From assembly GCA_965240325.2 (NCBI GenBank), contig OZ251235.1:806001-870000 (forward strand): 64,000 bases of DNA, written 5' to 3'. Every line of letters starts with the position of its first letter. Position 1 is the first letter of the stretch. The position numbers and the translations under genes were made by a program. Under the pieces are notes generated by a model, which saw only the letters and a list, made by a program, of their open reading frames with translations, was not told where the DNA came from and did not search any database. Below are positions 2,879-49,620 of the stretch, piece after piece. The DNA is from Rebecca billardiae RCC1528 (lineage: Eukaryota > Protista > Haptophyta).

Positions 2879-3982
2879 CTACTCAGCGCGCCCGCCGAAC
2901 GGCCAGAGCACGCGGCGCCACCACGGCCGCCGCTTCACCACCAGCCACGTCACCTCGTCCAGCTTGCCGATGCTCGCCCATGGCGTGCCGACGCGCGCGC
3001 GGAACTCGGGCGCGACATCTCGCCGGCCGAGCTGCTTGAGCGCGTAGCGCTTCGCGGGGAAGAGCTCGCGAAGCTCGGCCTCGGGCACGGCGAACGGCGG
3101 CCCCGGCGCCGCGGACTGCTCGTACTCCATCACCACGAGCAGCAGCCGCGCGCGCGGCTCGAGCAGCTCATCCAGGCGGCGTGCGTACGCGGGGCGCATG
3201 GCAGGCGGCACGGCGACGAGCCCACCGCGGTCCCACGCGCGGCCAAAGGTGCCGAGGGCGGCGCGGCCGCAGTGCTCGCCGAACCAGTCGCGCACGGCGA
3301 GCCACACGCCGCCACCCGGCCCTGGCTGCTTGTCCGCCCGTGCCGCCGCCGTCAGCCCCGCTGATAGCCAGTCCGACTCGCCCGCTCGCGCGAGCGGCGG
3401 CGGCGGCGATGCCGGTGTGCCCGGCGCGTGCGCGTCCAGGTAGTAGCCCGTGCCGAGTTCGCGCGTGGTGTACACGTAGCCAGGCTTCTCGCCAATGAAC
3501 GCGCCCGAGAGGATGAAGTCTGCCTTGCCACCCGGCGGCGGCGGCCGCGGCGTCGCGCGGCCCATCCGGAGCTGCGGCTGCTCCGCAGCAAACTGTTCGG
3601 CCGCGAGCGCGACACCATCGACGCCGACGACCTCGTGGCCCTTCGCCGCGAGATGCGGCATGTCGACGGTCTTGCCGCACAGTGGCACGAGCACGCGGTG
3701 CGGCCGATCTGCCGCGCCTCCGGGGAAGAGCGCTTCCTCGTTTGCCGACAGCGCCGGATGCACCTTGGGCTGATGGAAGGCGATGTAACCGTCGCCCCAG
3801 CGGCCCTCCCAGCGCGCGAGGCGCTCAGGCGTGGTGGCGTCAGGCGCGTAGTAGCAGTACGCGCCGAGCCCCGCACTCGCGAGCAGCGCGAGGTGGCGCG
3901 GGCGCAAGAGCGCCACGCGTGCGAGGCCCGCCGCGAGCCGGCCGAGGCGCGCCGTCATCGTGGCCGGCGTGATGAGGAACAC
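2879..3982 (-). CDS. TPMT: Thiopurine S-methyltransferase family protein
   Basis: W..RW..G.IAFHQ..VHP.L, RVLVPLCGKTVDM..LA..GHEVVGVD, WDRGGLVAV, GPPFAV...EL..LF motifs. Probable ATG at ~3958. Confidence 0.85.
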   Translation of the reverse strand: MFLITPATMTARLGRLAAGLARVALLRPRHLALLASAGLGAYCYYAPDATTPERLARWEGRWGDGYIAFHQPKVHPALSANEEALFPGGAADRPHRVLVPLCGKTVDMPHLAAKGHEVVGVDGVALAAEQFAAEQPQLRMGRATPRPPPPGGKADFILSGAFIGEKPGYVYTTRELGTGYYLDAHAPGTPASPPPPLARAGESDWLSAGLTAAARADKQPGPGGGVWLAVRDWFGEHCGRAALGTFGRAWDRGGLVAVPPAMRPAYARRLDELLEPRARLLLVVMEYEQSAAPGPPFAVPEAELRELFPAKRYALKQLGRRDVAPEFRARVGTPWASIGKLDEVTWLVVKRRPWWRRVLWPFGGRAE

Positions 3983-5332: not shown

Positions 5333-5884
5333 AGAACGGCTGCGAACAGTCAGAGTTGATTGACCGTCACTGACGGTAGTTCTGAATGTTATCATAGTAG
5401 TTACAGTAAGGTTCTAGTCGCGTCTAAGTAACTGTAAGCTAGCATAAGGTAGTCCGCAATGTCTATCTACTGATGTCCGTTAGGAATGCCCGCTATAGGC
5501 GTAGCTAGCGCTCGGTAGTCATAAGTCAATCAGGTCACTGCCGCCCTGGTCAGCTGCAGCTATCGGCACTGTCGACACTCACTCGACAGTCGCCGTCGGC
5601 GGACCGGCGGCGGCGGCGGCCGCTCGGCGCTCAACTCAGTTCAAGTCCAACGGTGAGTACTGTCTACTAGTACTGAGTCACCTGGATAGTCCGCGGCCGG
5701 GTCCGGGATAACCCGTGGCGACATAATAATATTATATATAATAATAATAATAAATATATATTTACTAAATACGTTCTGAGAGTAGCTCTCGCTATGCTAC
5801 CAAAGTGTCAATTACAAGTGTCACGGACACGCGATTCAGATATATGAATAAAGTTTCATATCGCAGCTGGCGTGCGGCCGGGGG

Positions 5885-6850
5885 TCACCTCGCAGTCACA
5901 GTCACACACTCGCTGCTGTTGACCGCAAAGGGCGCAACCTCCTGGATCCTCGACATGAGCCACAGCTCGTGCCGGACGTGGCCGACCGCGCCGTCCATGT
6001 TGGTCAGGTCGCTCGGCCACTTGAAGCGCGATGCTTGCTCCGGGTCGATCAGCGGCGGCTTCTTGCTGCAGCAGTGGCACCCGCCCATCAGCTCGCACAT
6101 CGGCGCCTCCCTCCTGGCCACCAGCTCGGCCAGCTGCGGCCTGTCCTTGAACAGCCCGGAGCACGAGAGGTGGCGCGATTTCCTCGGCTTGCCGAGCGTC
6201 TGGTTGAGCGTCTGCCGCCAGCCCGGGTTCAGCTTGCCACCCTGCGCCTCGAAGGCGAGCATACAACGCTCCACGTCCTCCATCATGCGGTAGGTGCGCA
6301 CCCAGCAGTCCGCCTGCAAGTCCGGCAACGAGAGGGCCATGCGCACAGACATCAGCCCGCCAAAGACGCACGCGAAGCGCTCGAAGCCGAGCTGCGGGTC
6401 CACGCCCTGCGCGAACACCGCACGCGCGGTGCTGCTCGCGAAGAGCTTCATCGTCTTCTGCAGCGCGCCCTCCCCGCCGCGGCCGTACGAGTAGAGTGAG
6501 GAATAATAGCTGCACGGGTCGCGGTAGCTCACGACGACGAAAGCGCGCTTTCGGTCGGCGATCGTCGAGGACTGGAACTCGCGGCGCATGTCGAACCTGC
6601 CCTTCCCCACCAGCATGGGGAGGAGCTCCCTGAGCGTCGTGCCGCCCGTCTTGGGCATGTGGTTGAGCAGCAGGACCTTGCGCCCGGTGAAGACGAGGTC
6701 CTCGCCCGGCTCGCTCGGCTCGCTGGCGGGCGCGATCAGCGACGGAACAGTCGAGTGACGCATCCGGCCGAGGAAGGCGCCCAAGTTCACGAGGGCCGGC
6801 AATAACTCTTTAGTCCGGCCATCAGCTTTGTGGCCGCGGCGCGGCGGCAT
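5885..6850 (-). CDS. Sulfotransferase-family protein, copy 1 (altered 3' end)
   Basis: LLNHMPKTGGTTLRELL (PAPS 5'PSB loop of Sulfotransfer_2 type) and VVSYRDPCSYYSSLYSY (3'PB). ATG 6850 is equivalent to 13449. An indel near the 3' end gives an earlier stop. Confidence 0.7.
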   Translation of the reverse strand: MPPRRGHKADGRTKELLPALVNLGAFLGRMRHSTVPSLIAPASEPSEPGEDLVFTGRKVLLLNHMPKTGGTTLRELLPMLVGKGRFDMRREFQSSTIADRKRAFVVVSYRDPCSYYSSLYSYGRGGEGALQKTMKLFASSTARAVFAQGVDPQLGFERFACVFGGLMSVRMALSLPDLQADCWVRTYRMMEDVERCMLAFEAQGGKLNPGWRQTLNQTLGKPRKSRHLSCSGLFKDRPQLAELVARREAPMCELMGGCHCCSKKPPLIDPEQASRFKWPSDLTNMDGAVGHVRHELWLMSRIQEVAPFAVNSSECVTVTAR

Positions 6851-6939
6851 TGCTCCGCGCGCCTCCGGACGGACAGCGACGCCGACAGCGCGGCAGCGCC
6901 GGATCAGGCTGATGCACTTTTGCACTAATAGAAGGTGCC

Positions 6940-7330
6940 AATGTAACCGTCGCCACGAGGAAGTATGTAACCGTCGCCCCAGCGGCACTTCCAGCGCGCG
7001 AGGCGCTCACCGGGCGTGGTGGCGTCGGGCGCGTACAGTTTACTAAGAATAAGAGACGCACACAGCTCAGGCAGGCGAGATTGACGCCCGCCAACTGTCA
7101 CCGCCCATGAAGCCGTCGCCGATGGTAGCGCCGCCGGAAAAAATCGTTCAGCCGTTACTAGCAGAACACGCCGAGCCCCGCAATCGCGAGCAGCGCGAGC
7201 ACTGAGCAGGTGGCGCGGGCGCAAGAGCGCCACGTCAACCGATGTGCCGCTCTGCGAGGTCCGCCCGGCGAGCGGGCCGCCGAGGCGCGCCGTCAGCGGC
7301 GTCAGCCCGGCCCCGGTCATGGACCTTCAT
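6940..7330 (-). pseudogene. Degenerate copy of the TPMT 5' region, interrupted by a 120-bp insertion
   Basis: Matches 3783-3988, e.g. ATGTAACCGTCGCCCCAGCGG and GGTGGCGCGGGCGCAAGAGCGCCACG; has frameshifts and insertions. Confidence 0.8.
7036..7155. mobile_element. CAGTTTACT-family insertion, 120 bp, flanked by TA on both sides
   Basis: Absent from the intact TPMT gene at the equivalent site (GGCGCGTA|GTAGCAG); TA at 7034-35 and 7156-57. Confidence 0.8.
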
Positions 7331-7650
7331 CGTCACTCGGTACTCACTCTAGTTAGTCTTACACTCACGTCTCACTCATCACTCAGGGCGAGTCAGGCCG
7401 CCGGCGGGACAGCACTCACAGCAGCTGACGGATACTGACGACCGCGACTGTGAAGTCAGAAGTGTGAGCCGCGTTATTTATTGGTGTGGTGCTAGCTAGG
7501 TCTTCCAGTATTTTAAGTCGACCGGACTTAACTATAGCTATAGGTCTAGCTATACCGGGATGATGATTGCGTCATCATGCGATTTTAGTTGTAAATTCTA
7601 CATGCTCGTACGGCCGGTCTTGGGAGTTACAGCTGAGTTCACATCCGACT

Positions 7651-8261
7651 TGTCGCGAACCGATTTAGCTCAGTCGTTTCGGGCTCTTCATTCCCTCGGA
7701 CATAACCGTAAGTCTCCTGTTGGACACCCCGCGAGGGGCTGTAGTCCTGTCCAGTGTTCTGACGGATTTGTTGTCGAGGTTTTTCTCTCCCCGCCTGGTC
7801 TTACCCAGGTGTTCCACCCTGCGTGCTCGTCTGCTCTGTGGCTTCGTAGAGACTCCGTCTTTTGTGGGCGGTGAGCCCTTCTTTGCTGCTGTGGCTTTGT
7901 GATGAGGCTCTTTTTGTGTCTTTGTTGTTCACCCGGGCGACTGTACCCGGAGGTTGCGCGTCGCGTACCGTGCTCGTTTTTCTTGTCGTCTTTTTCTTTG
8001 TCGGTCATCTTCTCGTGCCCCTCTTTCGTTCGTCTTTTTGCCGACTCCTCGCTTTTCATTCCCCCCCGGAGCCGCGAGGCTCTCGCGAGGTCGAAAGCGC
8101 TTCGCATGAAAGGCCAAGAGTTGCCCGCGTCGGTCGCTGGATTCGAACAGGTGACTTTACGGTTGTGTCGAAGGCGTTGAAGAGCCCGAAACGACTGAGC
8201 TAAATCGGTTCGCGCGAACCGATTTAGCTCAGTCGTTTCGGGCTCTTCATTCCCTCGGACA
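7651..8261. mobile_element. Palindromic-TIR element, copy 1 (left palindrome arm deleted)
   Basis: TG...CA ends; CGACT direct repeat at 7646-7650 and 8262-8266; a 44-bp deletion relative to copy 2. Confidence 0.85.
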
Positions 8262-8870
8262 CGACTATCTTAACTAGTTTCTCCGCCGCCGCGAGTCAAT
8301 TATTCGGTGACCAGCTTACGGCTACGGACGGTTCGAGCCTGCTGCGCTATTGTACATGTAGGGCCGCGCGAGATACACATGTGGATTATCCGCGATGCCG
8401 ATATGATGATGCTGATGAGCGTGGTGAAACCCGCCGATTCAATAAAGGGCGGCAAGTTCAAGCAAGTCGTTATAACGTACATCACATCGGCTGTTAGGTA
8501 ACTAGCTATACTTGATAATGTTCTAGTGTCCGAGTAGTGATGGCTGACGATAACTTTATGGCATATGCTAGAATATTTGTGAATACAGTATATGTACATT
8601 CTGCAGTATATGTACATTCTGCCGACTCGGCTCACAGTCGATGATCTCGTCGAATTGCAAACTTGTCAGTGCACTGCTTGTACCCCGAAGCTTGTTGCCT
8701 GTTGGGCCAGTTATGTATGCTGTTGGCAATGGCATGCGGTCCCCGCGCCCTCTGCAGGCGGGCTGTCCACAGTGGACGGTGGTGCCAGCGGGCGCTAGGT
8801 GGATCTCGGACTCAGGTCAGTGGTTTGAGGTTGAGTGGGGGGGGGGGTGGTTGGTTCAGGGCGGTCGGTT

Positions 8871-8959
8871 GGGGGCTGGCCAGGGTCATAGGGCTGGAGG
8901 CTTCGTCGGCCGCCGGGCGCCAGCAGCCAGAATCTGATCGTACCCGGTCCCGCCGGAGC
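8871..8959. repeat. Insertion-riddled copy of the repeat at 23234-23289 (inverted); duplicate at 12196-12284
   Basis: Identical to the reverse complement of 23234-23289 after removing 7 short insertions. Confidence 0.85.
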
Positions 8960-8992
8960 CCGTCGTTATAAATCAAGGGCGGGGAAATAGTT

Positions 8993-8995
<3 letters not shown>

Positions 8996-9026
<31 letters not shown>

Positions 9027-9047
9027 GTGCGACACATACACACACAC
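8996..9047. repeat. (CA)n microsatellite; duplicate at ~12321-12368
   Basis: Direct reading. Confidence 0.9.
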
Positions 9048-9132
9048 CAATATATATATAGTGACGTCTACTGCGACGACACCGAAGAAATTGTTTTGAT
9101 GTCGTCATAATTATATTATTAATTGGTTTTAT

Positions 9133-10128
9133 TCATACAGCCGGCGTGCGGCCGGGGGTCACCTCGCCTGACTCATTGCTCACACACTCGCTGCTGTTGA
9201 CCGCAAAGGGCGCAACCTCCTGGATCCTCGACTTGAGCCACAGCTCGTGCCGGATGTGGCCGACCGCGCCGTGCATGTTGGTCAGGTCGCTGGGCCACTT
9301 GAAGCGCGATGCTTGCTCCGGGTCGATCAGCGGCGGCTTCTTGCTGCAGCAGTGGCACCCGCCCATCAGCTCGCACATCGGCGCCTCCCTCCTGGCCACC
9401 AGCTCGGCCAGCTGCGGCCTGTCCTTGAACAGCCCGGAGCACGAGAGGTGGCGCGATTTCCTCGGCTTGCCGAGCGTCTGGTTGAGCGTCTGCCGCCAGC
9501 CCGGGTTCAGCTTGCCACCCTGCGCCTCGAAGGCGAGCATACAACGCTCCACGTCCTCCATCATGCGGTAGGTGCGCACCCAGCAGTCCGCCTGCAAGTC
9601 CGGCAACGAGAGGGCCATGCGCACAGACATCAGCCCGCCAAAGACGCATGCGAAGCGCTCGAAGCCGAGTTGCGGGTCCACGCCCTGCGCGAACACCGCA
9701 CGCGCGGTGCTGCTCGCGAAGAGCTTCATCGTCTTCTGCAGCGCGCCCTCCCCGCCGCGGCCGTACGAGTAGAGTGAGGAATAATAGCTGCACGGGTCGC
9801 GGTAGCTCACGACGACGAAAGCGCGCTTTCGGTCGGCGATCGTCGAGGACTGGAACTCGCGGCGCATGTCGAACCTGCCCTTCCCCACCAGCATGGGGAG
9901 GAGCTCCCTGAGCGTCGTGCCGCCCGTCTTGGGCATGTGGTTGAGCAGCAGGACCTTGCGCCCGGTGAAGACGAGGTCCTCGCCCGGCTCGCTCGGCTCG
10001 CTGGCGGGCGCGATCAGCGACGGAACAGTCGAGTGACGCATCCGGCCGAGGAAGGCGCCCAAGTTCACGAGGGCCGGCAATAACTCTTTAGTCCGGCCAT
10101 CAGCTTTGTGGCCGCGGCGCGGCGGCAT
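9133..10128 (-). CDS. Sulfotransferase-family protein, copy 2 (chimera of copies 1 and 3)
   Basis: Same motifs as copy 1; offset 3278 bp from copy 1 and 3321 bp from copy 3. Confidence 0.7.
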   Translation of the reverse strand: MPPRRGHKADGRTKELLPALVNLGAFLGRMRHSTVPSLIAPASEPSEPGEDLVFTGRKVLLLNHMPKTGGTTLRELLPMLVGKGRFDMRREFQSSTIADRKRAFVVVSYRDPCSYYSSLYSYGRGGEGALQKTMKLFASSTARAVFAQGVDPQLGFERFACVFGGLMSVRMALSLPDLQADCWVRTYRMMEDVERCMLAFEAQGGKLNPGWRQTLNQTLGKPRKSRHLSCSGLFKDRPQLAELVARREAPMCELMGGCHCCSKKPPLIDPEQASRFKWPSDLTNMHGAVGHIRHELWLKSRIQEVAPFAVNSSECVSNESGEVTPGRTPAV

Positions 10129-10217
10129 TGCTCCGCGCGCCTCCGGACGGACAGCGACGCCGACAGCGCGGCAGCGCCGGATCAGGCTGATGCACTTTTG
10201 CACTAATAGAAGGTGCC

Positions 10218-10608
10218 AATGTAACCGTCGCCACGAGGAAGTATGTAACCGTCGCCCCAGCGGCACTTCCAGCGCGCGAGGCGCTCACCGGGCGTGGTGG
10301 CGTCGGGCGCGTACAGTTTACTAAGAATAAGAGACGCACACAGCTCAGGCAGGCGAGATTGACGCCCGCCAACTGTCACCGCCCATGAAGCCGTCGCCGA
10401 TGGTAGCGCCGCCGGAAAAAATCGTTCAGCCGTTACTAGCAGAACACGCCGAGCCCCGCAATCGCGAGCAGCGCGAGCACTGAGCAGGTGGCGCGGGCGC
10501 AAGAGCGCCACGTCAACCGATGTGCCGCTCTGCGAGGTCCGCCCGGCGAGCGGGCCGCCGAGGCGCGCCGTCAGCGGCGTCAGCCCGGCCCCGGTCATGG
10601 ACCTTCAT
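10218..10608 (-). pseudogene. Second TPMT 5' relic with CAGTTTACT insertion (10314-10433)
   Basis: Duplicate of 6940-7330 inside the tandem unit. Confidence 0.8.
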
Positions 10609-10931
10609 CGTCACTCGGTACTCACTCTAGTTAGTCTTACACTCACGTCTCACTCATCACTCAGGGTGAGTCAGGCCGCCGGCGGGACAGCACTCACAGC
10701 AGCTGACGGATACTGACGACCGCGACTGTGAAGTCAGAAGTGTGAGCCGCGTTATTTATTGGTGTGGTGCTAGCTAGGTCTTCCAGTATTTTAAGTCGAC
10801 CGGACTTAACTATAGCTATAGGTCTAGCTATACCGGGATGATGATTGCGTCATCATGCGATTTTAGTTGTAAATTCTACATGCTCGTACGGCCGGTCTTG
10901 GGAGTTACAGCTGAGTTCACATCCGCCGACT

Positions 10932-11588
10932 TGTCCGAGGGAATGAAGAGCCCGAAACGACTGAGCTAAATCGGTTCGCGCGAACCGATTTAGCTCAGTC
11001 GTTTCGGGCTCTTCATTCCCTCGGACATAACCGTAAGTCTCCTGTTGGACACCCCGCGAGGGGCTGTAGTCCTGTCCAGTGTTCTGACGGATTTGTTGTC
11101 GAGGTTTTTCTCTCCCCGCCTGGTCTTACCCAGGTGTTCCACCCTGCGTGCTCGTCTGCTCTGTGGCTTCGTAGAGACTCCGTCTTTTGTGGGCGGTGAG
11201 CCCTTCTTTGCTGCTGTGGCTTTGTGATGAGGCTCTTTTTGTGTCTTTGTTGTTCACCCGGGCGCGACTGTACCCGGAGGTTGCGCGTCGCGTACCGTGC
11301 TCGTTTTTCTTGTCGTCTTTTTCTTTGTCGGTCATCTTCTCGTGCCCCTCTTTCGTTCGTCTTTTTGCCGACTCCTCGCTTTTCATTCCCCCCCGGAGCC
11401 GCGAGGCTCTCGCGAGGTCGAAAGCGCTTCGCATGAAAGGCCAAGAGTTGCCCGCGTCGGTCGCTGGATTCGAACAGGTGACTTTACGGTTGTGTCGAAG
11501 GCGTTGAAGAGCCCGAAACGACTGAGCTAAATCGGTTCGCGCGAACCGATTTAGCTCAGTCGTTTCGGGCTCTTCATTCCCTCGGACA
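10932..11588. mobile_element. Palindromic-TIR element, copy 2 (complete, 657 bp)
   Basis: TGT...ACA termini; 84-bp perfect TIRs; 96-bp perfect palindrome at 10932-11027; 72-bp palindrome at 11505-11576; 5-bp TSD CGACT at 10927-31 and 11589-93. Confidence 0.9.
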
Positions 11589-12453
11589 CGACTATCTTAA
11601 CTAGTTTCTCCGCCGCCGCGAGTCAATTATTCGGTGACCAGCTTACGGCTACGGACGGTTCGAGCCTGCTGCGCTATTGTACATGTAGGGCCGCGCGAGA
11701 TACACATGTGGATTATCCGCGATGCCGATATGATGATGCTGATGAGCGTGGTGAAACCCGCCGATTCAATAAAGGGCGGCAAGTTCAAGCAAGTCGTTAT
11801 AACGTACATCACATCGGCTGTTAGGTAACTAGCTATACTTGATAATGTTCTAGTGTCCGAGTAGTGATGGCTGACGATAACTTTATGGCATATGCTAGAA
11901 TATTTGTGAATACAGTATATGTACATTCTGCAGTATATGTACATTCTGCCGACTCGGCTCACAGTCGATGATCTCGTCGAATTGCAAACTTGTCAGTGCA
12001 CTGCTTGTACCCCGAAGCTTGTTGCCTGTTGGGCCAGTTATGTATGCTGTTGGCAATGGCATGCGGTCCCCGCGCCCTCTGCAGGCGGGCTGTCCACAGT
12101 GGACGGTGGTGCCAGCGGGCGCTAGGTGGATCTCGGACTCAGGTCAGTGGTTTGAGGTTGGGTGGGGGGGGGTGGTTGGTTCAGGGCGGTCGGTTGGGGG
12201 CTGGCCAGGGTCATAGGGCTGGAGGCTTCGTCGGCCGCCGGGCGCCAGCAGCCAGAATCTGATCGTACCCGGTCCCGCCGGAGCCCGTCGTTATAAATCA
12301 AGGGCGGGGAAATAGTTTATACACACACACACACACACACACACACCGTGCGACACATACACACACACCAATATATATATAGTGACGTCTACTGCGACGA
12401 CACCGAAGAAATTGTTTTGATGTCGTCATAATTATATTATTAATTGGTTTTAT

Positions 12454-13449
12454 TCATACAGCCGGCGTGCGGCCGGGGGTCACCTCGCCTGACTCATTGC
12501 TCACACACTCGCTGCTGTTGACCGCAAAGGGCGCAACCTCCTGGATCCTCGACTTGAGCCACAGCTCGTGCCGGATGTGGCCGACCGCGCCGTGCATGTT
12601 GGTCAGGTCGCTGGGCCACTTGAAGCGCGATGCTTGCTCCGGGTCGATCAGCGGCGGCTTCTTGCTGCAGCAGTGGCACCCGCCCATCAGCTCGCACATC
12701 GGCGCCTCCCTCCTGGCCACCAGCTCGGCCAGCTGCGGCCTGTCCTTGAACAGCCCGGAGCACGAGAGGTGGCGCGATTTCCTCGGCTTGCCGAGCGTCT
12801 GGTTGAGCGTCTGCCGCCAGCCCGGGTTCAGCTTGCCACCCTGCGCCTCGAAGGCGAGCATACAACGCTCCACGTCCTCCATCATGCGGTAGGTGCGCAC
12901 CCAGCAGTCCGCCTGCAAGTCCGGCAACGAGAGGGCCATGCGCACAGACATCAGCCCGCCAAAGACGCATGCGAAGCGCTCGAAGCCGAGTTGCGGGTCC
13001 ACGCCCTGCGCGAACACCGCACGCGCGGTGCTGCTCGCGAAGAGCTTCATCGTCTTCTGCAGCGCGCCCTCCCCGCCGCGGCCGTACGAGTAGAGTGAGG
13101 AATAATAGCTGCACGGGTCGCGGTAGCTCACGACGACGAAAGCGCGCTTTCGGTCGGCGATCGTCGAGGACTGGAACTCGCGGCGCATGTCGAACCTGCC
13201 CTTCCTCACCAGCATGGGAAGGAGCTCCCTGAGCGTCGTGCCGCCCGTCTTGGGCATGTGGTTGAGCAGCAGGACCTTGCGCCCGGTGAAGACGAGGTCC
13301 TCGCCCGGCTCGCTCGGCTCGCTGGCGGGCGCGATCAGCGACGGAACAGTCGAGTGACGCATCCGGCCGAGGAAGGCGCCCAAGTTCACGAGGGCCGGCA
13401 GGAACCCTTTGGTCCGGCCGTCAGCGTTGTGGCCGCGGCGCGGCGGCAT
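12454..13449 (-). CDS. Sulfotransferase-family protein, copy 3 (probable original locus)
   Basis: HMPKTGGTTL and RDP motifs; unique upstream sequence, head-to-head with the D27-like gene. Confidence 0.75.
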   Translation of the reverse strand: MPPRRGHNADGRTKGFLPALVNLGAFLGRMRHSTVPSLIAPASEPSEPGEDLVFTGRKVLLLNHMPKTGGTTLRELLPMLVRKGRFDMRREFQSSTIADRKRAFVVVSYRDPCSYYSSLYSYGRGGEGALQKTMKLFASSTARAVFAQGVDPQLGFERFACVFGGLMSVRMALSLPDLQADCWVRTYRMMEDVERCMLAFEAQGGKLNPGWRQTLNQTLGKPRKSRHLSCSGLFKDRPQLAELVARREAPMCELMGGCHCCSKKPPLIDPEQASRFKWPSDLTNMHGAVGHIRHELWLKSRIQEVAPFAVNSSECVSNESGEVTPGRTPAV

Positions 13450-13533
13450 TGCCCTTCCCGAGCGCGGGTGATGCGCGCAATGTCGTGCGGGCGTGCAGCG
13501 TGCTCAGCCCAACTATGAATCAGCGGCGGCACG

Positions 13534-14451: not shown

Positions 14452-15220
14452 GCTGCATCGCATACTTATTCGCCAACGTCGGTCCTGCGACGCCGCTTAT
14501 GCCATTCATGAACAACGAACTTAGAGAAGTATTCAGTATGATCATGCCCCGGCCGTCTAATGACTCAGCATCATGTAGTCCATATTATAATTCACACAGT
14601 AAAGAAATCGATTTTCGGCGTTACCGTAACCCGTCCGCACTTCCGCCCAGTGGGGATGCGGGGGATTTTTTTTCATGCCGCGTTCGCGGCACTTCGCGCC
14701 GCGCAGTAAGTCGAATGATAACTCGAAGCCTCCCGGCCGCCTACCCTGACCCTGTCCGAGTAGACAGTGCCTGGCCAGCGGCCCCAACCGTTCCGCCCGG
14801 CCCCAACCAACCTGACTTAGACAGCACCTTAGAACCCCGTTATTCCCCCATACTCCATAGTAAGTCCAGCCACCCGCCGCACTGAAGGCCACTCTGACTG
14901 CGTCAGGCCGGGGCAGCTGACGCAGTCCGACGGACCGACTCACACATGACACATAGCTCGAGCCTCAGCCTGCCCTGACCGTTGACCCGAGTCCTCCATC
15001 GCTTTTAGTGCCAGTGGACACGGCCCGCCTCTTGTTAGACCGGGGGCGGGGGTCATGCAGCCGGCTGCCGCTAGTGATGAGGCTTCAGCCAACAGCACTG
15101 TTACTTGTAAGCCCAGCACTGCGGGGTGGTCCAGGGGCACTCAAAGTGTCAGTGCACTTGAGCACTTCGTGGCAATTCGAGGTCATCGAATGCGAGCCAA
15201 AACTGCAATAGCCTACTGTA

Positions 15221-15373
15221 CAGTTTACTAAGAATAAGACTAAGAGACGCCGGACACACTAACACAGCTCACTGGCAGGCGAGATCGACGCCCGGCCGAA
15301 CTGTCAGTGTCACCGCCCATGAAGCCGTCGCCAATGGTACTTGGTAGCGCCGTCGGAAGATTCGTTCAGCCGT
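15221..15373. mobile_element. CAGTTTACT-family copy with many micro-insertions (may extend to ~15500)
   Basis: Starts TA|CAGTTTACTAAGAATAAG and aligns with 7036-7155; the right boundary is not determinable. Confidence 0.75.
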
Positions 15374-18190: not shown

Positions 18191-21100
18191 TCTCATGCGC
18201 GCGCGCCGATCATCATCATGTGCGCGCGCCGATCATCACTTCGTGCTCAGCGTAACCATCGCATCATCATCCGGGTGCCGAGCGTGCCATCATCGCACAC
18301 ACCTTTCGGCGCGCTTACATGGGCGTACGTGGTGTCTGTGGCCGGGGCGTGGGGGACGACGTCGTCGGCGGGCTGGCGTTGATACCCGCGCGCGCCGATC
18401 ATCATTCGTGCTCCGCGCAACCATCATCATCATTCGGGTGCCGAGTGCGCCATCCTCGCGCGCACCTTTCGGCGCGCTTACATGGGTGTACGTGGTGTCT
18501 GTGGCCGGGGTGTCGGGGACGACGTTGTCGGCGGGCCGGCGTTGATACCTGCGCCGCGTGGCGGCTCTGGCGGATGCAGCTCTCGCCGGTCGGCTGCCAC
18601 TGCAGCGGGGCGCGCGCGCTGCTGGGCGTTTTCGGGCGCGAAAAGCGACGTGGCCCGCTGGCCACCTGCGGCGCTTTCACCTGGCCTTGGTCTTCCTCGC
18701 TCGTCACCTTCTGCGTCGCTCGAGCGCGGACGCGCTCATCATCGTCAATCACCTCCTGTCTATCGCTCGAACCGCTGCTTTCCGTTCCGTTCCGTTTCTA
18801 CGCGCGTTCCTTTCCTCACGCCGAGCGTGCCTGGCCCTTCCCGCCACGCGCCACGCGTTCCTCTCCCATTCCTGTGCCATCTTCCTCACTCATCACCTCC
18901 TGCTTCGCTCGAGCGCTCGAACGTGGTCGCGTTCATCGTCAATCGCCTTGTGCCTCTCGCGCGAGCCGTTGCGGCGAATTCGTCACGCGCGCGCATGGTC
19001 ATGCGCGCGCGCCGATCATCGCGTGACGATCATCATGCGCGCGCACCGACCAGCGCCGATCATCATGCGCGCGCGCCGTCATGCGCGCGCGCCGAGTATC
19101 ATGCGCCGTTTATCATGCGCGCGCTCCGATCCGCCCGCGCGTGCACCGCTCATCGTGCGCGCGCACCGATCGTCATTCGTGCGCCGCACGGCCATCACCA
19201 TTCGCGCACCGTGCGCGTCACCTCGCACGCCCCTTTTCGGCGCGCTTTCACGGGCGCTCGTGCGGTCTGCAGGCGCGTGGTTGACGACGTTGTCGGCAAG
19301 CCGACGTCGATACCTGCGCCTCATGTCGGCTCGGGTGTGTTCCGCGACGGCTCGGGCGCATGCGCTCTCGCCGGCCGGCGGCGGCGGCGGCAGTGCGCGC
19401 GTGCTGCTGGGCGGTTTCGTCGGGCAAGTGGACGGCGTGGCCTGCGGGTCACCTGCAGCGCTTCGCCTGGCCTGTGCCGGCGCGCGACGACGGGCGGGTT
19501 ACGCCAGTGGTCCTGTGGTCCGCCGGTCGCTGCGGGCTCTCGGCGACCTCTGGCAGGGGCTGAGCGCAGTGAGCGCTGGGGGGGAGGGGGGGGGGCACCC
19601 AGTCCGCCGCTCCGCGGCCTCACACCGGCGGCGTGCGGCGTGGTGGTGGGCAGGGCGCTGCGCCTCTGGGGGTCGGGGCCGGGCCTGGCCTCGGCCGCGC
19701 CGGCCGACGCCGGCCACGCCGGCGTGGCGCCTGGCGCTGCGCCTCTTTGGGCGGGCGCTGCCTCGCCGCCCTGCCCCCCCCCGTGGCGACTGGCGGCCCC
19801 AGGCAACCCCTGCATCCGCCTATCGTAAACACCGGATCGCCAGAAGGAGCGCGACGCGCGCGCGGTTATGGGGCGATGGCCGACGCGACGGGAGTGGTGG
19901 GTTTGGCAGTCCGCGGCGGTTATCGCGTTATGACTGCCGCGTCGCTGCTCCGCCGCCGCCCGTGCCCCTCCCCGCTAGGTGGGCGTATACCTGGCCGGAC
20001 GCGGGCTCGGCGCTCGCAGCGGCATCGCCGGAGTGACCGCACGGTGACGAGATGTGAGTCGGAAGCAGCTCGCCTTTGCGGCGCGGGTACCAAGCGGAAA
20101 GTGAGCGTACCTGCAGGCGGGCCGACCCTCGGCGTGACAGGCGCACCTTCGGGGCCGGTCAGGGCAGCCCACGTCGTGCAGCCGACCGCTTCCGCCGCGA
20201 CTGCCCCCCGGCGCACCCTGCCCCGGCCGACGCCTGAGCACAGCGGCCCCGCCCGGGCCCGGGGCCCCCGGGCGGCAGGCCGCGGCGGCGCCGGCACACT
20301 CACGGACAGCCAGCGGCGCTCCTCCGCCTCCCGCCCGCCCTCCCTGGCGTGGGATCGCCGCGCTGGGGTGGGTGCGGCTTGAGTCAGCGTCCACGGGGGG
20401 GGCGATGTGCTGCCGGGCGGGCGCTGCCTCGCCGCCCTGCCCCCCCCCGTGGCGACTGGCGGCCCCAGGCAACCCCTGCATCCGCCTATCGTAAACACCG
20501 GATCGCCAGAAGGAGCGCGACGCGCGCGCGGTGCGTCTCGGAGATCTCCTTCGGACACTCCGCTGGTTGGTTGCGCTCCGCTGCCGCCCGCGCGCGCTAA
20601 AATTCATTCTTTAAAATAGGGTTTTCAGTGCACGAAGAACCAAGCGAAGAACATGACTCCAACGGGCAAAAAAGAGCAAAATCAACAGATTTGCGGAGCT
20701 TCCCGTAGGCTATGAAGGGCACGGTGCAGGCGAGTGATGCGGGCGCTCCATGGCCATGTCGGCCGTCGCGGATGGCGTCAACGCACGCCACATGCTCAAG
20801 ACACATGCTCACTCGCACACACTTGGGTTGGGCGGGGCGAGACCGCGCTCGCGCAGCCGATCGACACTCAACGACGCTTGTGCGTTGCGACTGCTTTGAC
20901 ACAGCGAACGGCAGGGTGCAGACTCGAGATGTGAGGGTCATGCGGGCTTGGACTCGTAGCCAGTACCCACTGGCGGCAGCCTGCATGCCGCGCGTACTCG
21001 TCCGGACGCGAACTCGTACATCGAGCGGCCAAACTGCTGCGCGAGTCGCCGCCCCAAGTCACAAGCTCGCCATGGATCGCAGAGCCCGCGTAATCTCGGC

Positions 21101-22074
21101 GCTGTACGGATAACGGGCTCCGGGCTTGGGACGTCAACCCCCGAGATCGGTCTCGCAGCGGCCCGGACACGATGGCGCGCCCACGAGAGGCGCGCGTGCG
21201 CCCGCCTACCGGCGCTGCAGGCCGGCGCGGCTGATCGGCGCGGTCCACAGGACACGTGGGCACCGCGCGCGCCTCTTTTCCTGTCCTCTCGCGCTCCTCG
21301 CCGCGCGCAGTAGCCCGCTGCCAAGCCATCAACGCCTGCCAAGCGAGCCGGCGCGCGCACCAAGGGCGCGCGCTCGGCGCGGATAGGGCCAATTAAGGTC
21401 GGGGCACGGCATGGGCGAGTGGGCACGCATGTTATACACCGCTCGGGCGCACGCGTCCGGCGTTCTGCGCGCGCCCTTGCCACTGGCAAGTGCTCGCGCA
21501 CTGCGCGCGTAACTCACGAATGGTGCACCTCGCGGCAGCCCGCAGGGTATGCTCTGCATGGAGGCATCCTTCGCTTCCCAGCGGGCGAATCGGTGCCAGC
21601 CGCAGCCTGGGGGTCGTCTGTGAGTACCCCGGTCCAAGATGCCCCATGGGCACGCTGATACGGGTGCTATGTCGTCGATGCTGCCGAGGAGTGCCGAGCG
21701 GCTCTGCTCTGTGACGTCCCGGCACATGGGCCTTGTCGACTCTCGACCTTCCGCTCCGAGTTCATCACGCCAGACGCAGGCGATGCCGCTGTGCACGCTC
21801 GCGTTCGACCACTTCGTACCCACCAGACTGGCCCTTCTGTCTCTGTTGGCGTAGGTGGCGTGCGCGCGCGCGCGCGTGCCGCCTGCCACAGTACAGTAGA
21901 CGTAGTCGGTGCCGCGGACGCGGTGGCCGTGGGCCGCGTAGCGACCTGCTCGGATAGTCGTAGTCGCTTTAAAATAAGACTGCACAGCCTGGTTGATTTA
22001 CATATACATCGTCATCATCACTGCGCGATTTGCTGATGCATCAGTGTCATCAGCGCTCATCATCACCTACATTT

Positions 22075-23070
22075 ATCGGTACAGTAGTTTAAGCGGGCAG
22101 CGGCGCGCCAAAGCGACAGTACGCGCGCCGTGCAGAGGTGAGCTCGGGCACGACAGACGGTCCGCGCGCGTCTCCGTCTTGACCGAGAACTTCCTCGCGG
22201 TGGCGATGGCGGACTCGTGCTTGGCCGCCGCCTGCCGTGGCGTGATCTCGCTCGACGACGCACCCGGAGGCGGTGACGCGCACGGGCAGGCGCTGCTCGC
22301 ATGCCCGTTCCTCACCCAGTCGCAGATGCCGAGCGCGCGGCATGCGGAGCACTGTGCCAGCGCTGGCGCGGGGCACGCGCGCGCGCTCGCGCTGCCGCCA
22401 TCGCCCGCGCCGGACTTCTTCGTCTTCCTCTAGGTGGGCGTCGAGCCCATCGACGGCGGTTCCATCTCTCGCCGCTGCTGCCGTACCCGCGTGCTCTGCG
22501 GGCGCGGCCGCGGCCGGCGGCGCCGGCACCTCGAGACCAGGCAAGAGGCGTGCCGTGGCCGCGACGAGCGCGGGCATCAGGTCGCCAGCCGTCACCTGGC
22601 CGTCGAGAGGCTTGAGCGCATCCTTGTGCGCCGCCGACAGCGCGCACACCGCCGGGCGTACGAGCAGCTGCCGCACGGCGCACACAGCTGTCGCGGGCTG
22701 GCTGCATCCACATCACATTTCGAAACACCCGCTTCCGCTCGGCGCCAGCGCCGCGCCACTCAACCGCGGTTTCGATCGAGCGGAAGTGGGCGGGCTCGCG
22801 GACCACCTCGAAGCCGACGATGAGGCCGAGCGCATCTGCGGCGCCGGGAAGCAGGAACCCGCCGGTGCCCTTGCATTTGGCCGGCGTCGGGAACCAATCC
22901 GCCACGCGCACAGCATGGAGCGCAATCGCTCCAGGAGCGGGCGCGCCTGCGAAGCGGAGGTCGCCCCCAGCACCGGCTGTGAAGCGGGCAGTGTACACGG
23001 ACAGCGCGCCGTCCTCGTGCGCGAGGATCACGCCGTCTGGGAGGCCGTCAGTCAGAATGACGCGCGCCAT
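22075..23070 (-). pseudogene. Possible frameshifted gene of unknown function
   Basis: Coding-like peptide switches frame near 22685 and again near 22440 (TAG at 22430-32); the last segment reads CSACRALGICDWVRNGHASSAC. Confidence 0.3.
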
Positions 23071-23546
23071 GCCCGCCGCAGCGGCGCAGCGCCTGCGACG
23101 GCACGCCTGGCCTGACGCCGTTGGCGCAGAGGCGGCGCGCCGGACTCACCTCCCGGACGGCACCCCCCCCTGGGGAGGGTTGCCGTCCGGGAGGCGCATT
23201 CTCTCCGGACTGGTTCGGGGGTTAACGCCCCAAGCTCCGGGTGATCAGGCTGGCGGCCGAAGCCTCCAGCCCTACCCTGGCCAGCCCCCTCCAGTCGCGC
23301 TGGATTGTGAGATGCAGATCGACGTCTACTCTGCTGATGAGAACTTTACTGGTATTACAGCAGGAGTATGGGGTAGTAGTAGTACCTGTTTACCTGTGAT
23401 ACCAGGGCAGTGACCGGGCGTTAACCGTACGCCATAGTCATCAGGTGGGCGCGAAATCGCTTTGATGAGCTTCTCGACGTTGACGCGCTGTTGCGACGAC
23501 TCTCCAGCCTGCCCGACTCGCGAGCCGACACAGACGTACGTACGCC

Positions 23547-26083: not shown

Positions 26084-26788
26084 CGGCAAGCGCCAAGCTA
26101 GAGGCAGAGCAGTCATCGCGTCGGACGACCAGCTGATGAGTAATCACTGATGACGCGGTTTGAGAATAGGTAGCATCATCATCAGCAGCGCACAATATAT
26201 ATATATAGATAGATGCGCTGATGATGTCGTATATATATCTGCTGAGTCGTCATCGCCGGTCGTGCGCCAGCGCCGTCAGCAGTCAGTCCGCGGATGTACT
26301 CATTCTGCTATGATTATTTATAACGACACAGGTATAGGACGACGCGGGTCTCCTGCTGATTCGTCGGCGGCAGTGCCCGATCGTCGACACGTGAAGTCGG
26401 CGCGTTGGTGGCAGAGCATGGATCATCCAGTAGTGACGATGATTTAATTTTTCGGATAGCGCCTGCTGACACTCGTCCTCCTCACAGTAGAGTCAGTATA
26501 GTCACGACTCATCACACACTCGTGAGTCGTGACTCGGCGAGGAGGAGTGTGTATGCGTGTGTGCTGCGAGGTGCGAGCGAGCGTGTATGCGTGTGTGTGA
26601 TGTGCGTGCGCGCGTGCTCGCGCGTACGTGCAGCCCGTGTGCGTGCCCGCTATCAGCGGGCGAGCGATACACGCAGACGATCTTTGTCTTCGGGTGACAC
26701 TCACCTACTTGAGCCGGGTGAGCGTCGTGGTGGTACAGCACCTCAGGTAGTCCACCAGGCGGCACTTACACGTGTCGTGCGTGAGGCC

Positions 26789-34839: not shown

Positions 34840-35141
34840 GTGGCAGCCACCGCCTCTCCTGCCCGCCCCGCGCCCATCGCGCTCCCGCTGCTGCCACCGC
34901 CGTCAGCACGGCCGGGCAGCTTCTCTGCCACCACCACCGCCGCAGGGCTGGCGTCGCCGTCCGGTCACCGGTGACCGGTCCGCCTCCGCACGCTGCCGCC
35001 CTCCTCCGCGGTGCCACTACAGGGCTACCTCTACTGCCGCCTGTGATCAGCCGCAAGTCGTCCGCGCCGGTAGCGCCATCGACGCACGATGCAAGCAAGC
35101 TCGCGCCTCCGAGCGCGACTGCGAGCCACGCGCCCAGCAGG
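34840..35141 (+). pseudogene. Degenerate duplicated fragment of cNMP-gene exon 3 (~25285-25507)
   Basis: Shares GTGATCAGCCGCAAGTCGTCCGCGCCGG and neighbouring blocks (LLPPVISRKSSAP.APS.HDA.KLAPPSA). Confidence 0.85.
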
Positions 35142-35598
35142 CACGCGAATCGACGGTGCAGTGACGGCTTCTCAGCCGACCAGCGGCTGGCAAATCTCGG
35201 CGCTCAGTAGTCTCGGAACTTTCTCGGATATGCTCATACTCTCGCTCAGCACGGCATATTCAGCATTATTAACGTTTTTTGCATCAGCGTCACCAGCAGG
35301 CGATTATATACGGATCCGTCGTCATATTATAAAAGGGGGCGTCGCGTCATCATCATCCGAATGATACTAAGGGGCTACTAAGGCGAAGGCTCCAATGCGT
35401 TCAGCCAGTAGCACTGGCAGCAGCGGCGCTGCCGGTTACTCACACGCCGGCCGGGTGACACGCCGCGACCGCCGTCAATGATGACGGCACTAGATAGTAG
35501 ATGTGAAGATTTCCGCCACACGACTTGAATACTTACATGTATATATATGTACTGATCAGACCGCCACGAGACCATGGGGGCCGGGCGCCGCGGGCGCG

Positions 35599-36383: not shown

Positions 36384-36420
<37 letters not shown>

Positions 36421-40497: not shown

Positions 40498-40553
<56 letters not shown>

Positions 40554-40910: not shown

Positions 40911-40941
<31 letters not shown>

Positions 40942-41367: not shown

Positions 41368-41402
<35 letters not shown>

Positions 41403-42418: not shown

Positions 42419-42470
<52 letters not shown>

Positions 42471-44077: not shown

Positions 44078-44113
<36 letters not shown>

Positions 44114-44991: not shown

Positions 44992-45027
<36 letters not shown>

Positions 45028-48666: not shown

Positions 48667-49620
48667 GGCTCCAGCCACAGTCAGGGACGTCCACTGACCC
48701 TATGGGGGGGGTGCATTTAGACGAACCCCTGGGAGCCAGGGAGCGATGAGGGTACCAATCGAAAGATCTCCGGGGCGGCGGACGAAGCCGCAGGTTCAAA
48801 ACCGAAGCCGCAGACGATTTCGCGTATGTTTCCTTGTCCTTGAACGCGTCGTCACAGTCGAACACGGAGGACTCCATCGTGCTGACCTTTTTTTTGGCCT
48901 CCCGGACCGGTCTCCCGCACGATGGAGTTCCACCGAGCGGGCAAGGAGATGAGACGTCTCGGAGGCCTTGATCCGGGCGCATCCGCTGGTTGGCCGCGGC
49001 ACCCTGTCGCGCTCGCGCCCCGGGTGCACCCTCGTGCACTGAGAGTCACCGATGGGCGAGAAGCTGCTCGTCGACTCGAGCAAGCTGCGCGCTGTCCGCG
49101 TCGAGCTGCTCGCGCCGGCGGCCACACCTTGAGCTCGCGGCGGTGCGGGCGTGCGCATGAGCTTGTCGGCTTCGAGCTACTCGCGTCCCGGGCCGCGCCG
49201 TCAGCTCGTGGTGGCATGGGTATGCGCACGAGCTCGTGCTTGGCTGCAGCTCCTCAGAGGACTGCCACAGCTGGCTGGCTCAGAGAGTCAGAGCTTGTTC
49301 GCGAGTGCTGAGGTGCGGCGTGGCCTGCGCGGTGCGCCGCAGCAGTCAATGCGTTGCTCGATCAGGACTGCGCTGCGCTACGTCTAACGTCTTGACTCGC
49401 GAGTGAGGCGCCGAAATCGGGGCTGTGTGCAATGCGTCATGGCCGCTCGGCGCAGAGCCGACGCCGCACGACGCAGCCGGTCTGCTATGCAAATTCTGGC
49501 GAGTCAGGGGCCCTATTGAGGCGTATTTGGTCCTTCGATCGGCTGGGGGGAGCCCCCCCCAGACCCCCCCAGAGAGTCTGAATGCACCCCTGCTGGACGT
49601 CCCGGACAGTGACCGGAACC
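48667..49620. mobile_element. Putative degenerate TIR element
   Basis: 48667-48733 is an imperfect inverted copy of 49568-49620 (19/23 over CCAGCCACAGTCAGGGACGTCCA, plus GGGGTGCATT.AGAC). Confidence 0.5.

What the first reader, a model, noticed from the sequence alone, without database searches (positions are those of the whole stretch)
8871..8959. Repeat copies decay by dense micro-insertions rather than substitutions: candidate insertion-based mutational system
Seen: this 89-bp stretch equals the reverse complement of 23234-23289 (56 bp) exactly once 7 insertions are removed (CAT, TCG, GGGCGCC, AGC, AGAATC, GT, TCCCGCCGG; 33 nt added, 0 substitutions). The same signature recurs in unrelated pairs: 15221-15373 vs 7036-7155 (CTAAGA, CGGACACACTA, CT, GTGTCA, CTTGGTA), the TPMT relic vs TPMT, 34840-35141 vs the cNMP exon, and 14724-14790. 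Many inserts duplicate 3-6 adjacent bases, often with a 1-2 nt spacer. Established: neutral decay is usually substitution-dominated, and templated insertions are a known polymerase-theta end-joining scar. Inference: a strongly insertion-biased process acts on non-coding or repeated DNA here. It could be an insertional analogue of fungal RIP or an unusual repair pathway.
Basis: partly seen in the sequence, partly recalled or inferred. Interest (0 to 1): 0.8.

Follow-up and report, generated by a model that had tools for sequence, protein, structure and literature searches.

The report
Repeat DNA decays by tiny insertions
In this alga's genome, dead copies of mobile elements and broken gene pieces change about as often by gaining 1-10 extra letters (often a copy of the neighbouring letters plus a few new ones) as by single-letter changes, and gains outnumber losses about 7 to 1; this looks like a slow, insertion-biased mutation process rather than a defence system aimed at repeats.

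Summary
Observation confirmed and extended. The 56-mer (23234-23289, reverse strand) is an exact subsequence of the 89-mer (0 of 20,000 shuffles).

It is the near-terminal part of a high-copy poly(A) LINE. Window 8619-8990 is an old copy of that LINE with 24 insertions (119 nt), 3 deletions and 18 substitutions.

In 75 LINE copies from many contigs, copy-private changes are 184 substitutions, about 157-160 insertions and 23 deletions. That is ins:del of about 7:1, stable under five scoring schemes. Insertion density rises with substitution density, so the insertions accumulate after integration.

About 4% are microsatellite or homopolymer slips. Typical events are untemplated 2-nt inserts, perfect 3-4-nt duplications, and 5-8-nt duplications joined by 1-3 new bases.

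A TIR DNA-transposon family grows in the same way: 27 copies are longer than the modal length and 3 shorter. A second repeat family and two gene relics agree.

The RIP-like reading is not supported, because dozens of 99-100% identical repeats carry no inserts. The inferred mechanism is end-joining repair of short staggered breaks, with fill-in plus added bases.

I could not settle whether unique DNA is hit equally. All four non-coding stretches I checked genome-wide contain dispersed repeats.

First readers noted the same pattern in at least 7 other windows of this genome. None of those notes showed a follow-up.

The parts
8871..8959 (+).
8619..8990 (+). Whole old, 5'-truncated LINE 3' copy (matches reference positions about 1293-1581 of L060): 24 insertions, 3 deletions, 18 mismatches
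11946..12315 (+). Twin of that copy in the next unit of the 3.3-kb tandem repeat. It is identical over the 151 nt tested, so the inserts predate the duplication
23234..23289 (-). 56-nt fragment identical to the LINE consensus (reference 1501-1556), with both flanks unrelated to the LINE
14681..14840 (-). Very decayed further copy of the same LINE tail (about 20 insertion blocks, 7 deletions; the alignment is uncertain at this age)
7033..7155 (+). Second dispersed family (fixed CAGTTTACT end) in its common short form; a twin lies at 10311-10433
15218..15373 (+). Insertion-laden copy of the second family (about 8 insertion blocks, 35 nt, 5 mismatches)
2879..3982 (-). Intact TPMT gene ORF (Pfam PF05724, E 6e-41). 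Its 5' part, 3783-3957, is the parent of the relic
6965..7295 (+). TPMT relic, interrupted by the second-family element at 7036-7157: about 9 insertions, 0 internal deletions, about 7 substitutions
34842..35142 (+). Relic of the exon at 25288-25508: 8 insertions (90 nt), 24 mismatches and some small opposite gaps
48667..49620 (+). Copy of a roughly 948-bp TIR DNA transposon (27-nt terminal inverted repeats), 6 nt longer than the modal length. Genome-wide, 27 copies are longer and 3 shorter than the mode
26297..26419 (+). Copy of a short dispersed element: 122-123 nt here against 105 nt in 14 or more other copies
5855..13452 (+). 3.3-kb tandem repeat (98% identity). Differences since duplication: about 11 substitutions, two de novo micro-duplications (CCG, GC), two simple-repeat indels and one 44-nt indel

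Best explanation
SHOWN. Non-functional DNA in this 72-Mb algal genome accumulates small de novo insertions. This is seen in dead LINE copies, a second repeat family, a TIR DNA transposon and gene relics. Insertions arise at about the same rate as base substitutions and about 7 times more often than deletions. Old copies therefore grow, by about 2.6 nt net per substitution.

The inserts accumulate after integration, roughly in step with substitutions, and are not produced by reverse transcription. They fall into three recurring forms:
- untemplated 1-3-nt inserts, with a mode at 2 nt, CG the commonest;
- perfect 3-4-nt duplications of unique sequence;
- duplications of the adjacent 5-8 nt separated from the original by 1-3 (rarely up to 9) new bases (X-spacer-X).

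INFERRED. These are scars of error-prone end joining. A break with a short 5' overhang is filled in on both ends, which duplicates the overhang. Bases are added before ligation by a family-X or theta-type polymerase. Blunt or nick-derived breaks receive only the added bases.

On this reading it is a general mutational bias filtered by selection in genes. It is not a system aimed at repeats.
For: Polarity and numbers:
- The short form is shared by more than 40 exact copies genome-wide.
- In 75 de-duplicated LINE copies (52.4 kb aligned), private events are 184 substitutions, 160 insertions and 23 deletions.
- Under five scoring schemes the counts are 138-169 insertions, 13-26 deletions and 181-205 substitutions. 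Inserted vs deleted nt are 586 vs 103.

Timing:
- Insertion density rises from 1.0 to 12 per kb across classes of private substitution density. Spearman rho is 0.61, p = 9e-6.
- Copies that are 99-100% identical over 1.5 kb have 0-2 events.

Anatomy:
- 108 of 157 inserts have no other private change within 4 nt.
- Inserts of 6 nt or more are 51% adjacent duplicate, against 9% in flank permutations.
- Direct local templating has z = 9.4; inverted templating has z = 1.9.
- The duplication-by-spacer table shows 3-4-nt duplications with spacer 0, and all eleven 5-nt duplications with a 1-3-nt spacer.
- Only 6 of 157 inserts are homopolymer or array expansions.

Not dependent on reverse transcription:
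- In the TIR element family, 27 copies are longer and 3 shorter than the modal length, +268 vs -4 nt. Length rises as identity falls, rho = -0.69, p = 5e-6.
- The TPMT relic has 9 insertions and 0 deletions.

Same scar in bulk non-coding-like DNA: direct 5-mers at offsets 6-8 are 1.8-2.4 times the shuffle expectation (149 vs 61 +/- 6.5 at offset 7). Offset 5 and inverted repeats are not enriched.

Machinery present: two Ku loci, two family-X polymerase loci and three family-A polymerase loci.

Precedent for fill-in duplications by NHEJ: 10.1101/2020.05.03.075358.
Against: - These are fixed differences, not raw mutations, so a fixation bias cannot be separated from a mutation bias.
- The insertion:substitution ratio differs among copies (chi-square p = 0.0016).
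- The 'non-repeat' non-coding sample was repeat-free only within my 300-kb sample. All four spot checks against the whole genome found dispersed repeats in such DNA. Action on truly unique DNA is therefore not shown. The in-frame excess in coding-like DNA is weak (1.5x).
- In the 1.13-kb family, several copies are 2-9 nt shorter than the window copy (unpolarised; possibly subfamily differences).
- Simple fill-in predicts perfect 5-nt duplications, and none were seen.
- In bulk non-coding-like DNA, spacer base composition equals background, so there is no polymerase-specific signature.
- The source of the staggered breaks is unknown.
- The enzyme assignment is inference only.
Confidence: 0.6

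Rival explanations
1. A repeat-targeted insertional defence, analogous to fungal RIP. Duplicated DNA would be recognised and deliberately riddled with small insertions.
For: Every polarised example is a repeat or a duplicate. All four non-coding stretches I checked genome-wide contain dispersed repeats, so repeat-specificity cannot be excluded from scar density. Recurrent insertion sites exist: 15 clusters against 7 expected, p = 0.0005.
Against: - Dozens of 99-100% identical copies of several families carry no inserts.
- Insert density rises gradually with substitution density.
- The 98% tandem repeat shows only 2 de novo micro-duplications against about 11 substitutions.
- Coding-like DNA shows a modest excess of in-frame micro-duplications.
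Confidence: 0.07
2. Excision footprints of cut-and-paste transposons: a target-site duplication plus a few leftover bases remains each time an element leaves.
For: The X-spacer-X form is what a footprint looks like. TIR elements with many copies exist in this genome.
Against: - Duplication length runs from 2 to 10 nt with no target motif.
- The commonest class has no duplication at all.
- No 40-300-nt element is seen sitting inside 52 kb of LINE copies, against 21 scars with a duplication of 5 nt or more.
- By eye, the spacers match neither palindromic nucleotides nor TG/CA ends.
Confidence: 0.08
3. Errors made during retrotransposition, such as template slippage or untemplated addition by the LINE reverse transcriptase. 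The inserts would then be present at birth.
For: Two of the families are probably retroposons. In the youngest class, inserts outnumber substitutions 22 to 4, although binning by substitutions biases this comparison.
Against: - Young copies are clean over 1.5 kb.
- Insert density tracks substitution density.
- A TIR DNA transposon family and gene relics show the same growth.
- Micro-duplications arose after a DNA-level tandem duplication.
Confidence: 0.04
4. Replication slippage or a fixation bias. Ordinary slippage would create duplications, or biased gene conversion or selection would favour longer alleles. No special break-repair pathway would be involved.
For: An insertion bias of 6:1, with indels as frequent as substitutions, is known from S. 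pombe mutation-accumulation lines, where it is tied to microsatellites (PMC4704713). Perfect 3-4-nt duplications make up 18 of 157 events here.
Against: Only 4% of inserts extend a pre-existing run or array. 123 of 157 contain bases not templated by the adjacent flank. Slippage does not create a novel spacer between the two copies.
Confidence: 0.15
5. An assembly or polishing artefact.
For: This is a long-read assembly (41 contigs), and I could not inspect any reads.
Against: - Inserts are confined to old copies and correlate with substitutions.
- Young copies match at 99.9-100% with no indels.
- The two tandem twins share all inserts.
- 5-10-nt duplications with spacers are not a known consensus-error type (my own knowledge).
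- Coding repeats in the same loci diverge with almost no gaps.
Confidence: 0.03

Closest known systems
Fungal repeat-induced point mutation (RIP)
   Same: Repeated, non-functional DNA ends up heavily mutated while the functional copy stays intact.
   Different: RIP makes C-to-T transitions, acts quickly on any duplicate, and is repeat-specific. Here the changes are insertions, near-identical repeats are untouched, and accumulation is gradual.
De novo 1-4(5)-bp duplications from trapped topoisomerase II, repaired by NHEJ (10.1101/2020.05.03.075358; the related human TOP2A mutator is PMC8795545)
   Same: Duplication of unique sequence by fill-in of a 5' overhang and ligation. There are hot spots. 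Ku, ligase IV and Pol4 are required in yeast. Here, perfect 3-4-nt duplications of unique sequence are a clear class, and Ku and family-X polymerase genes exist.
   Different: In yeast the mode is 4 bp, with no spacer. Here the largest class is untemplated 2-nt inserts, and 5-8-nt duplications always carry a 1-3-nt new spacer.
Polymerase-theta-mediated end joining with templated insertions (PMC4490562, PMC4912351)
   Same: Short inserts copy flanking sequence and are interspersed with untemplated bases. Rare complex inserts repeat the same flank segment, such as the 37-nt insert in L012. Family-A polymerase loci are present.
   Different: Theta scars usually come with deletions and microhomology, and with both direct and inverted templates. 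Here 69% are clean insertions, deletions are rare, and inverted templating is marginal.
Insertion-biased spontaneous indel spectrum of Schizosaccharomyces pombe (PMC4704713; review PMC6330053)
   Same: Insertions are about 6 times as frequent as deletions, indels are as frequent as base substitutions, and there is a net gain of DNA.
   Different: [quoted passage not shown] Here the mean is 3.7 nt, about 96% are outside pre-existing runs, and most contain novel bases.
Transposon excision footprints and N-nucleotide addition at V(D)J-type joints
   Same: A flank duplication with a few extra bases at the junction.
   Different: There is no fixed duplication length, no target motif, no palindromic nucleotides and no occupied sites.

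Membership tests
RIP-like repeat-induced mutation | Mutation is triggered by duplication itself, so near-identical multi-copy sequences are quickly and heavily mutated | tested here: not met
   The LINE, the 513-bp element and the 1.13-kb element each have 10 or more copies at 98-100% identity with equal lengths and 0-2 private events.
RIP-like repeat-induced mutation | Single-copy DNA is spared | tested here: inconclusive
   The scar excess was found in non-coding-like DNA. That DNA proved to be largely dispersed repeats genome-wide. There is only a weak in-frame excess in coding-like DNA.
RIP-like repeat-induced mutation | C:G to T:A transitions dominate | tested here: not met
   Private substitutions are spread over all classes, and insertions are as frequent as substitutions.
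Polymerase-theta end-joining scars | Inserts are templated from flanking DNA, both direct and inverted | tested here: inconclusive
   Direct adjacent templating is strong (z = 9.4). Inverted templating is marginal (z = 1.9). No clear distant templates were found.
Polymerase-theta end-joining scars | Junctions carry deletions with microhomology | tested here: not met
   108 of 157 inserts are clean, and only 7 have a deletion within 4 nt. Deletions are 7 times rarer than insertions.
Polymerase-theta end-joining scars | A POLQ gene (helicase plus family-A polymerase) is present | tested here: inconclusive
   There are three family-A polymerase loci. I could not fetch the DNA to check for a fused helicase.
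NHEJ fill-in duplications (TOP2-type) | Perfect duplications of unique sequence no longer than the 4-nt stagger | tested here: inconclusive
   21 perfect de novo duplications were found: thirteen of 3 nt, five of 4 nt, and 2-, 6- and 10-nt events. They are a minority of the 157 events, and the 5-8-nt duplications with spacers exceed a 4-nt stagger.
NHEJ fill-in duplications (TOP2-type) | Dependence on Ku, ligase IV and a family-X polymerase | not testable with these tools
   Ku (2 loci) and family-X polymerase (2 loci) genes are present. Dependence needs genetics.
Transposon excision footprints | Fixed target-site duplication length or motif, and occupied sites elsewhere | tested here: not met
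   Duplication length is 0-10 nt with no motif. No 40-300-nt elements were found inside 52 kb of LINE copies.
Microsatellite slippage (S. pombe-type insertion bias) | Indels lie in pre-existing homopolymers or tandem arrays | tested here: not met
   6 of 157 inserts extend a pre-existing run or array.

The most novel reading that the evidence does not exclude
A lineage-specific enzyme activity repeatedly makes short (about 5-nt) staggered cuts in non-genic or repeated DNA. It could be a domesticated integrase or transposase, or a guided nuclease. Each cut would be sealed with a duplication plus filler, giving an insertion-based genome-defence or genome-expansion system rather than a passive repair bias. 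The recurrent insertion sites, the absence of perfect 5-nt duplications and the repeat-rich substrate do not exclude this.
Probability: 0.07. Interest if true: 0.85.

Novelty: new variant of a known kind. Interest (0 to 1): 0.58.

Why it matters
Most eukaryotes and bacteria studied lose DNA through small indels (PMC9748784, PMC3542557). That deletion bias underlies models of genome-size equilibrium.

Here, neutral DNA gains about 2.6 nt per substitution. It does so through de novo 'duplication plus filler' events rather than microsatellite slippage. If this reflects the mutation spectrum, three things follow:
- Break repair, rather than replication error, would be a leading source of sequence change in a marine alga.
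- The way repeats become unrecognisable in this genome would be explained, which matters for repeat annotation and for dating insertions.
- The genome would offer a natural read-out of end-joining outcomes in a group where DNA repair is almost unstudied.

It also warns that identity-based ages of mobile elements and gap-penalised alignments will mislead in this genome.

Tried and rejected
All family work therefore rests on the window plus 90 loci.
- Rfam found no RNA family in the window.
- The tandem 3.3-kb repeat has too few differences to give a ratio.
- A 'second family' query turned out to be a Sel1-like coding repeat.
- Treating non-coding-like DNA without hits in my sample as unique was undermined by whole-genome searches.
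- Distant or inverted templates for spacers gave no signal beyond chance.
- By eye, spacers do not fit hairpin (palindromic) nucleotides, LTR TG/CA ends or poly(A) remnants.
- Spacer composition equals background, so there is no terminal-transferase-like signature.
- Literature searches found no description of this in haptophytes.
- I did not verify the organism. 'Haptophyte-type alga' comes from earlier scan notes.

Full report
**What the sequence is**

The window is G000:C18:806001-870000 of a 72-Mb, 41-contig, GC-rich eukaryotic genome. Earlier scan notes call it a haptophyte-type alga; I did not verify that.

The 56-nt 'short form' (reverse strand of 23234-23289) occurs as an exact copy at more than 40 scored places, out of 491 first-look candidates. 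In those places it is followed by a short conserved tail ending in an A-run. It is preceded by up to 1.5 kb or more of conserved sequence that breaks off at a different point in each copy. This is the 3' end of a poly(A) LINE with the usual variable 5' truncation. I used one natural young copy (L060:1-1581) as the reference.

**The observation**

The 56-mer is an exact subsequence of window 8871-8959 (33 extra nt, no substitution). None of 20,000 shuffles and 4 of 20,000 random 89-mers of the window reach this.

Homology continues on both sides. Window 8600-9000 aligns to the last 293 nt of the LINE with 18 mismatches, 24 insertions (119 nt) and 3 deletions (11 nt). The twin copy in the next unit of a 3.3-kb tandem repeat is identical over the 151 nt tested. 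The inserts are therefore real inherited sequence that predates that duplication.

The stretch at 14724-14790 is simply another, older copy of the same LINE.

**Polarity and numbers**

I aligned 75 de-duplicated LINE copies from many contigs to the reference (52.4 kb aligned). Only changes private to one copy were counted; shared changes are subfamily differences.

| Measure | Result |
|---|---|
| Private substitutions / insertions / deletions | 184 / 160 / 23 |
| Range under five scoring schemes | 181-205 / 138-169 / 13-26 |
| Inserted nt vs deleted nt | 586 vs 103, about +2.6 nt per substitution |

Polarity does not rest on the reference alone. Each insert is private while the short state is shared by dozens of copies, and the inserts themselves duplicate their flanks.

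As an internal control, lineages under selection look ordinary. A divergent active subfamily differs from the reference by about 90 substitutions but only about 8 insertions and 2 deletions. A Sel1-like coding repeat in the same loci diverges with 114 mismatches per 716 nt and 2 gaps.

**Timing**

- Copies that are 99-100% identical over 1.5 kb carry 0-2 private events.
- Insertion density rises from 1.0 to 1.9 to 7.0 to 12.0 per kb across classes of private substitution density. Spearman rho is 0.61, p = 9e-6.
- The inserts therefore accumulate after integration and are not reverse-transcriptase errors.
- The ratio does vary among copies (chi-square p = 0.0016). Part of this is probably unsampled subfamilies.

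**Independence from reverse transcription**

- Window 48667-49620 is a copy of a TIR DNA transposon with 27-nt terminal inverted repeats and fixed ends.
- Of 36 genome-wide copies, 27 are longer than the modal length and 3 shorter, +268 vs -4 nt, binomial p = 8e-6. Length increases as identity falls, rho = -0.69, p = 5e-6. This test needs no alignment.
- A short element at 26297-26419 is 122-123 nt here, against 105 nt in 14 or more other copies.
- The relic of the TPMT gene's 5' part has about 9 insertions (2-13 nt, frame-breaking) and no internal deletion.
- Since the DNA-level 3.3-kb tandem duplication, two de novo micro-duplications (CCG, GC) have arisen alongside about 11 substitutions.

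**Anatomy of the inserts**

Lengths peak at 2 nt (46 events), then 3 (38), 1 (19) and 4 (15). There is a second hump at 6-8 nt (24) and a dip at 5. The mean is 3.7 nt.

- Only 6 of 157 extend a pre-existing homopolymer or array. 21 are perfect duplications of unique sequence, and 123 contain bases not templated by the adjacent flank.
- The duplication-by-spacer table is sharply structured. 3- and 4-nt duplications have no spacer (13 and 5 events). All eleven 5-nt duplications have a 1-3-nt spacer and none has spacer 0. The largest class is an untemplated dinucleotide (32 events); among all 46 two-nt inserts, CG is the commonest (12).
- Inserts of 6 nt or more are 51% adjacent duplicate, against 9% in flank permutations. 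Direct local templating has z = 9.4 and inverted z = 1.9.
- 108 of 157 inserts have no other private change within 4 nt.
- Independent inserts recur at the same LINE positions: 15 clusters against 7 expected, p = 0.0005. Some clusters are split complex events.
- The same X-spacer-X scar is over-represented in bulk non-coding-like DNA. Direct 5-mers at offsets 6, 7 and 8 occur 115, 149 and 108 times, against about 61 +/- 7 expected. Offset 5 and inverted repeats are not enriched.

**What could not be settled**

I first read that last result as showing the process in unique DNA. Four spot checks against the whole genome all found dispersed repeat families in such DNA, so the 'unique' label does not hold.

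The only hint from genes is a 1.5-fold excess of in-frame micro-duplications (offsets 9 and 12) over a triplet-preserving shuffle in coding-like DNA. That hint is weak.

One family (1.13 kb) has several copies 2-9 nt shorter than the window copy. Without sequences I could not polarise these; pairs of equal size suggest subfamily differences.

Further genome DNA could not be fetched. As a result, LTR-LTR pairs, the cleanest post-integration test, were not examined.

**Mechanism**

*Shown:* the process is gradual, post-integration, insertion-biased, mostly non-slippage, and has a duplication-plus-filler form.

*Inferred:* the scars come from end joining of breaks with short 5' overhangs. Fill-in of both ends duplicates the overhang, and added nucleotides form the spacer. 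Blunt or nick-derived breaks receive only the added bases.

- Fill-in duplications by NHEJ are documented for trapped topoisomerase II in yeast. There they are 1-4 bp, occasionally 5, depend on Ku and Dnl4 and partly on Pol4, and show hot spots (10.1101/2020.05.03.075358).
- Polymerase theta alternates between untemplated and templated addition (PMC4912351).
- The genome has two Ku loci, two family-X polymerase loci and three family-A polymerase loci. That is compatible with either pathway and decides nothing.

Against a pure theta model: deletions and inverted templates are scarce.

Against a pure TOP2 model: the 2-nt untemplated class, and the 5-8-nt duplications that always carry a spacer.

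Against excision footprints: there is no fixed duplication length or motif, and no occupied sites.

**Comparison with what is known, and novelty**

An insertion bias of about 6:1, with indels as frequent as substitutions, is already known from S. pombe mutation-accumulation lines. There the mean insertion is 1.6 bp, and the authors tie small indels in general to microsatellites (PMC4704713; PMC6330053).

The ratio here is therefore not unprecedented. What differs is the anatomy: de novo events, mean 3.7 nt, and novel spacers. What also differs is the evidence type, namely fixed decay of dead elements.

I found no description of this for haptophytes.

I file it as a new variant of a known kind: an insertion-biased small-indel spectrum with end-joining scars. 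It is not a RIP-like system.

First readers flagged the same pattern in at least seven other windows of this genome. None of those notes showed a follow-up. They are unchecked leads, not independent evidence. My LINE and TIR data, drawn from many contigs, do test the genome-wide claim directly.

Noticed in passing
window 23234-23289; loci L032, L034, L035, L036: The 56-nt piece in the window is an isolated fragment whose two flanks are unrelated to the LINE. It starts exactly at reference position 1501, a run of five G. Four other 5'-truncated copies (L032, L034, L035, L036) start at that same position, which suggests a preferred truncation or template-switch point.
   Followed up: partly
window 48667-49620: A roughly 948-bp non-autonomous TIR element (27-nt terminal inverted repeats plus sub-terminal inverted repeats; possibly a 4-bp AGTG target duplication), with 38 or more copies at 88-96% identity across many contigs.
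   Followed up: partly
window 20600-21113 and 21121-22250: Two adjacent dispersed elements that look recently active. One is 513 bp, with 10 or more copies at about 100% identity and equal length. The other is 1.13 kb or more, with copies at 96-100%.
   Followed up: no
window 35600-46700: About 11 kb at 84-88% G+C, with self-similar low-complexity sequence and a 3699-codon open frame on the minus strand. The single ARAGORN tRNA-Ala call (39256-39351, 96 nt) lies inside it and is probably spurious.
   Followed up: no
window 5855-13452: A 3.3-kb unit present in about 2.3 tandem copies at 98% identity. It carries the old LINE copy, the TPMT relic and a palindromic TIR element. One unit differs by a 44-nt indel at 7654/10935.
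   Followed up: partly
L053:2100-3056 and L054:302-1211: A Sel1/TPR-like coding array of 108-nt repeats that diverges almost only by substitution (114 mismatches, 2 gaps per 716 nt). It is a useful contrast with the insertion-rich dead elements.
   Followed up: no
L034 and L036, flanks of the LINE copies: Target-site duplications of this LINE appear long (about 14-19 nt) and imperfect, with mismatches or small indels between the two copies.
   Followed up: no
L012, insert at LINE reference position 1411: A 37-nt complex insert in which the flank segment TCTGGAG recurs three times with different fillers. It looks like several rounds of copying at one break.
   Followed up: no
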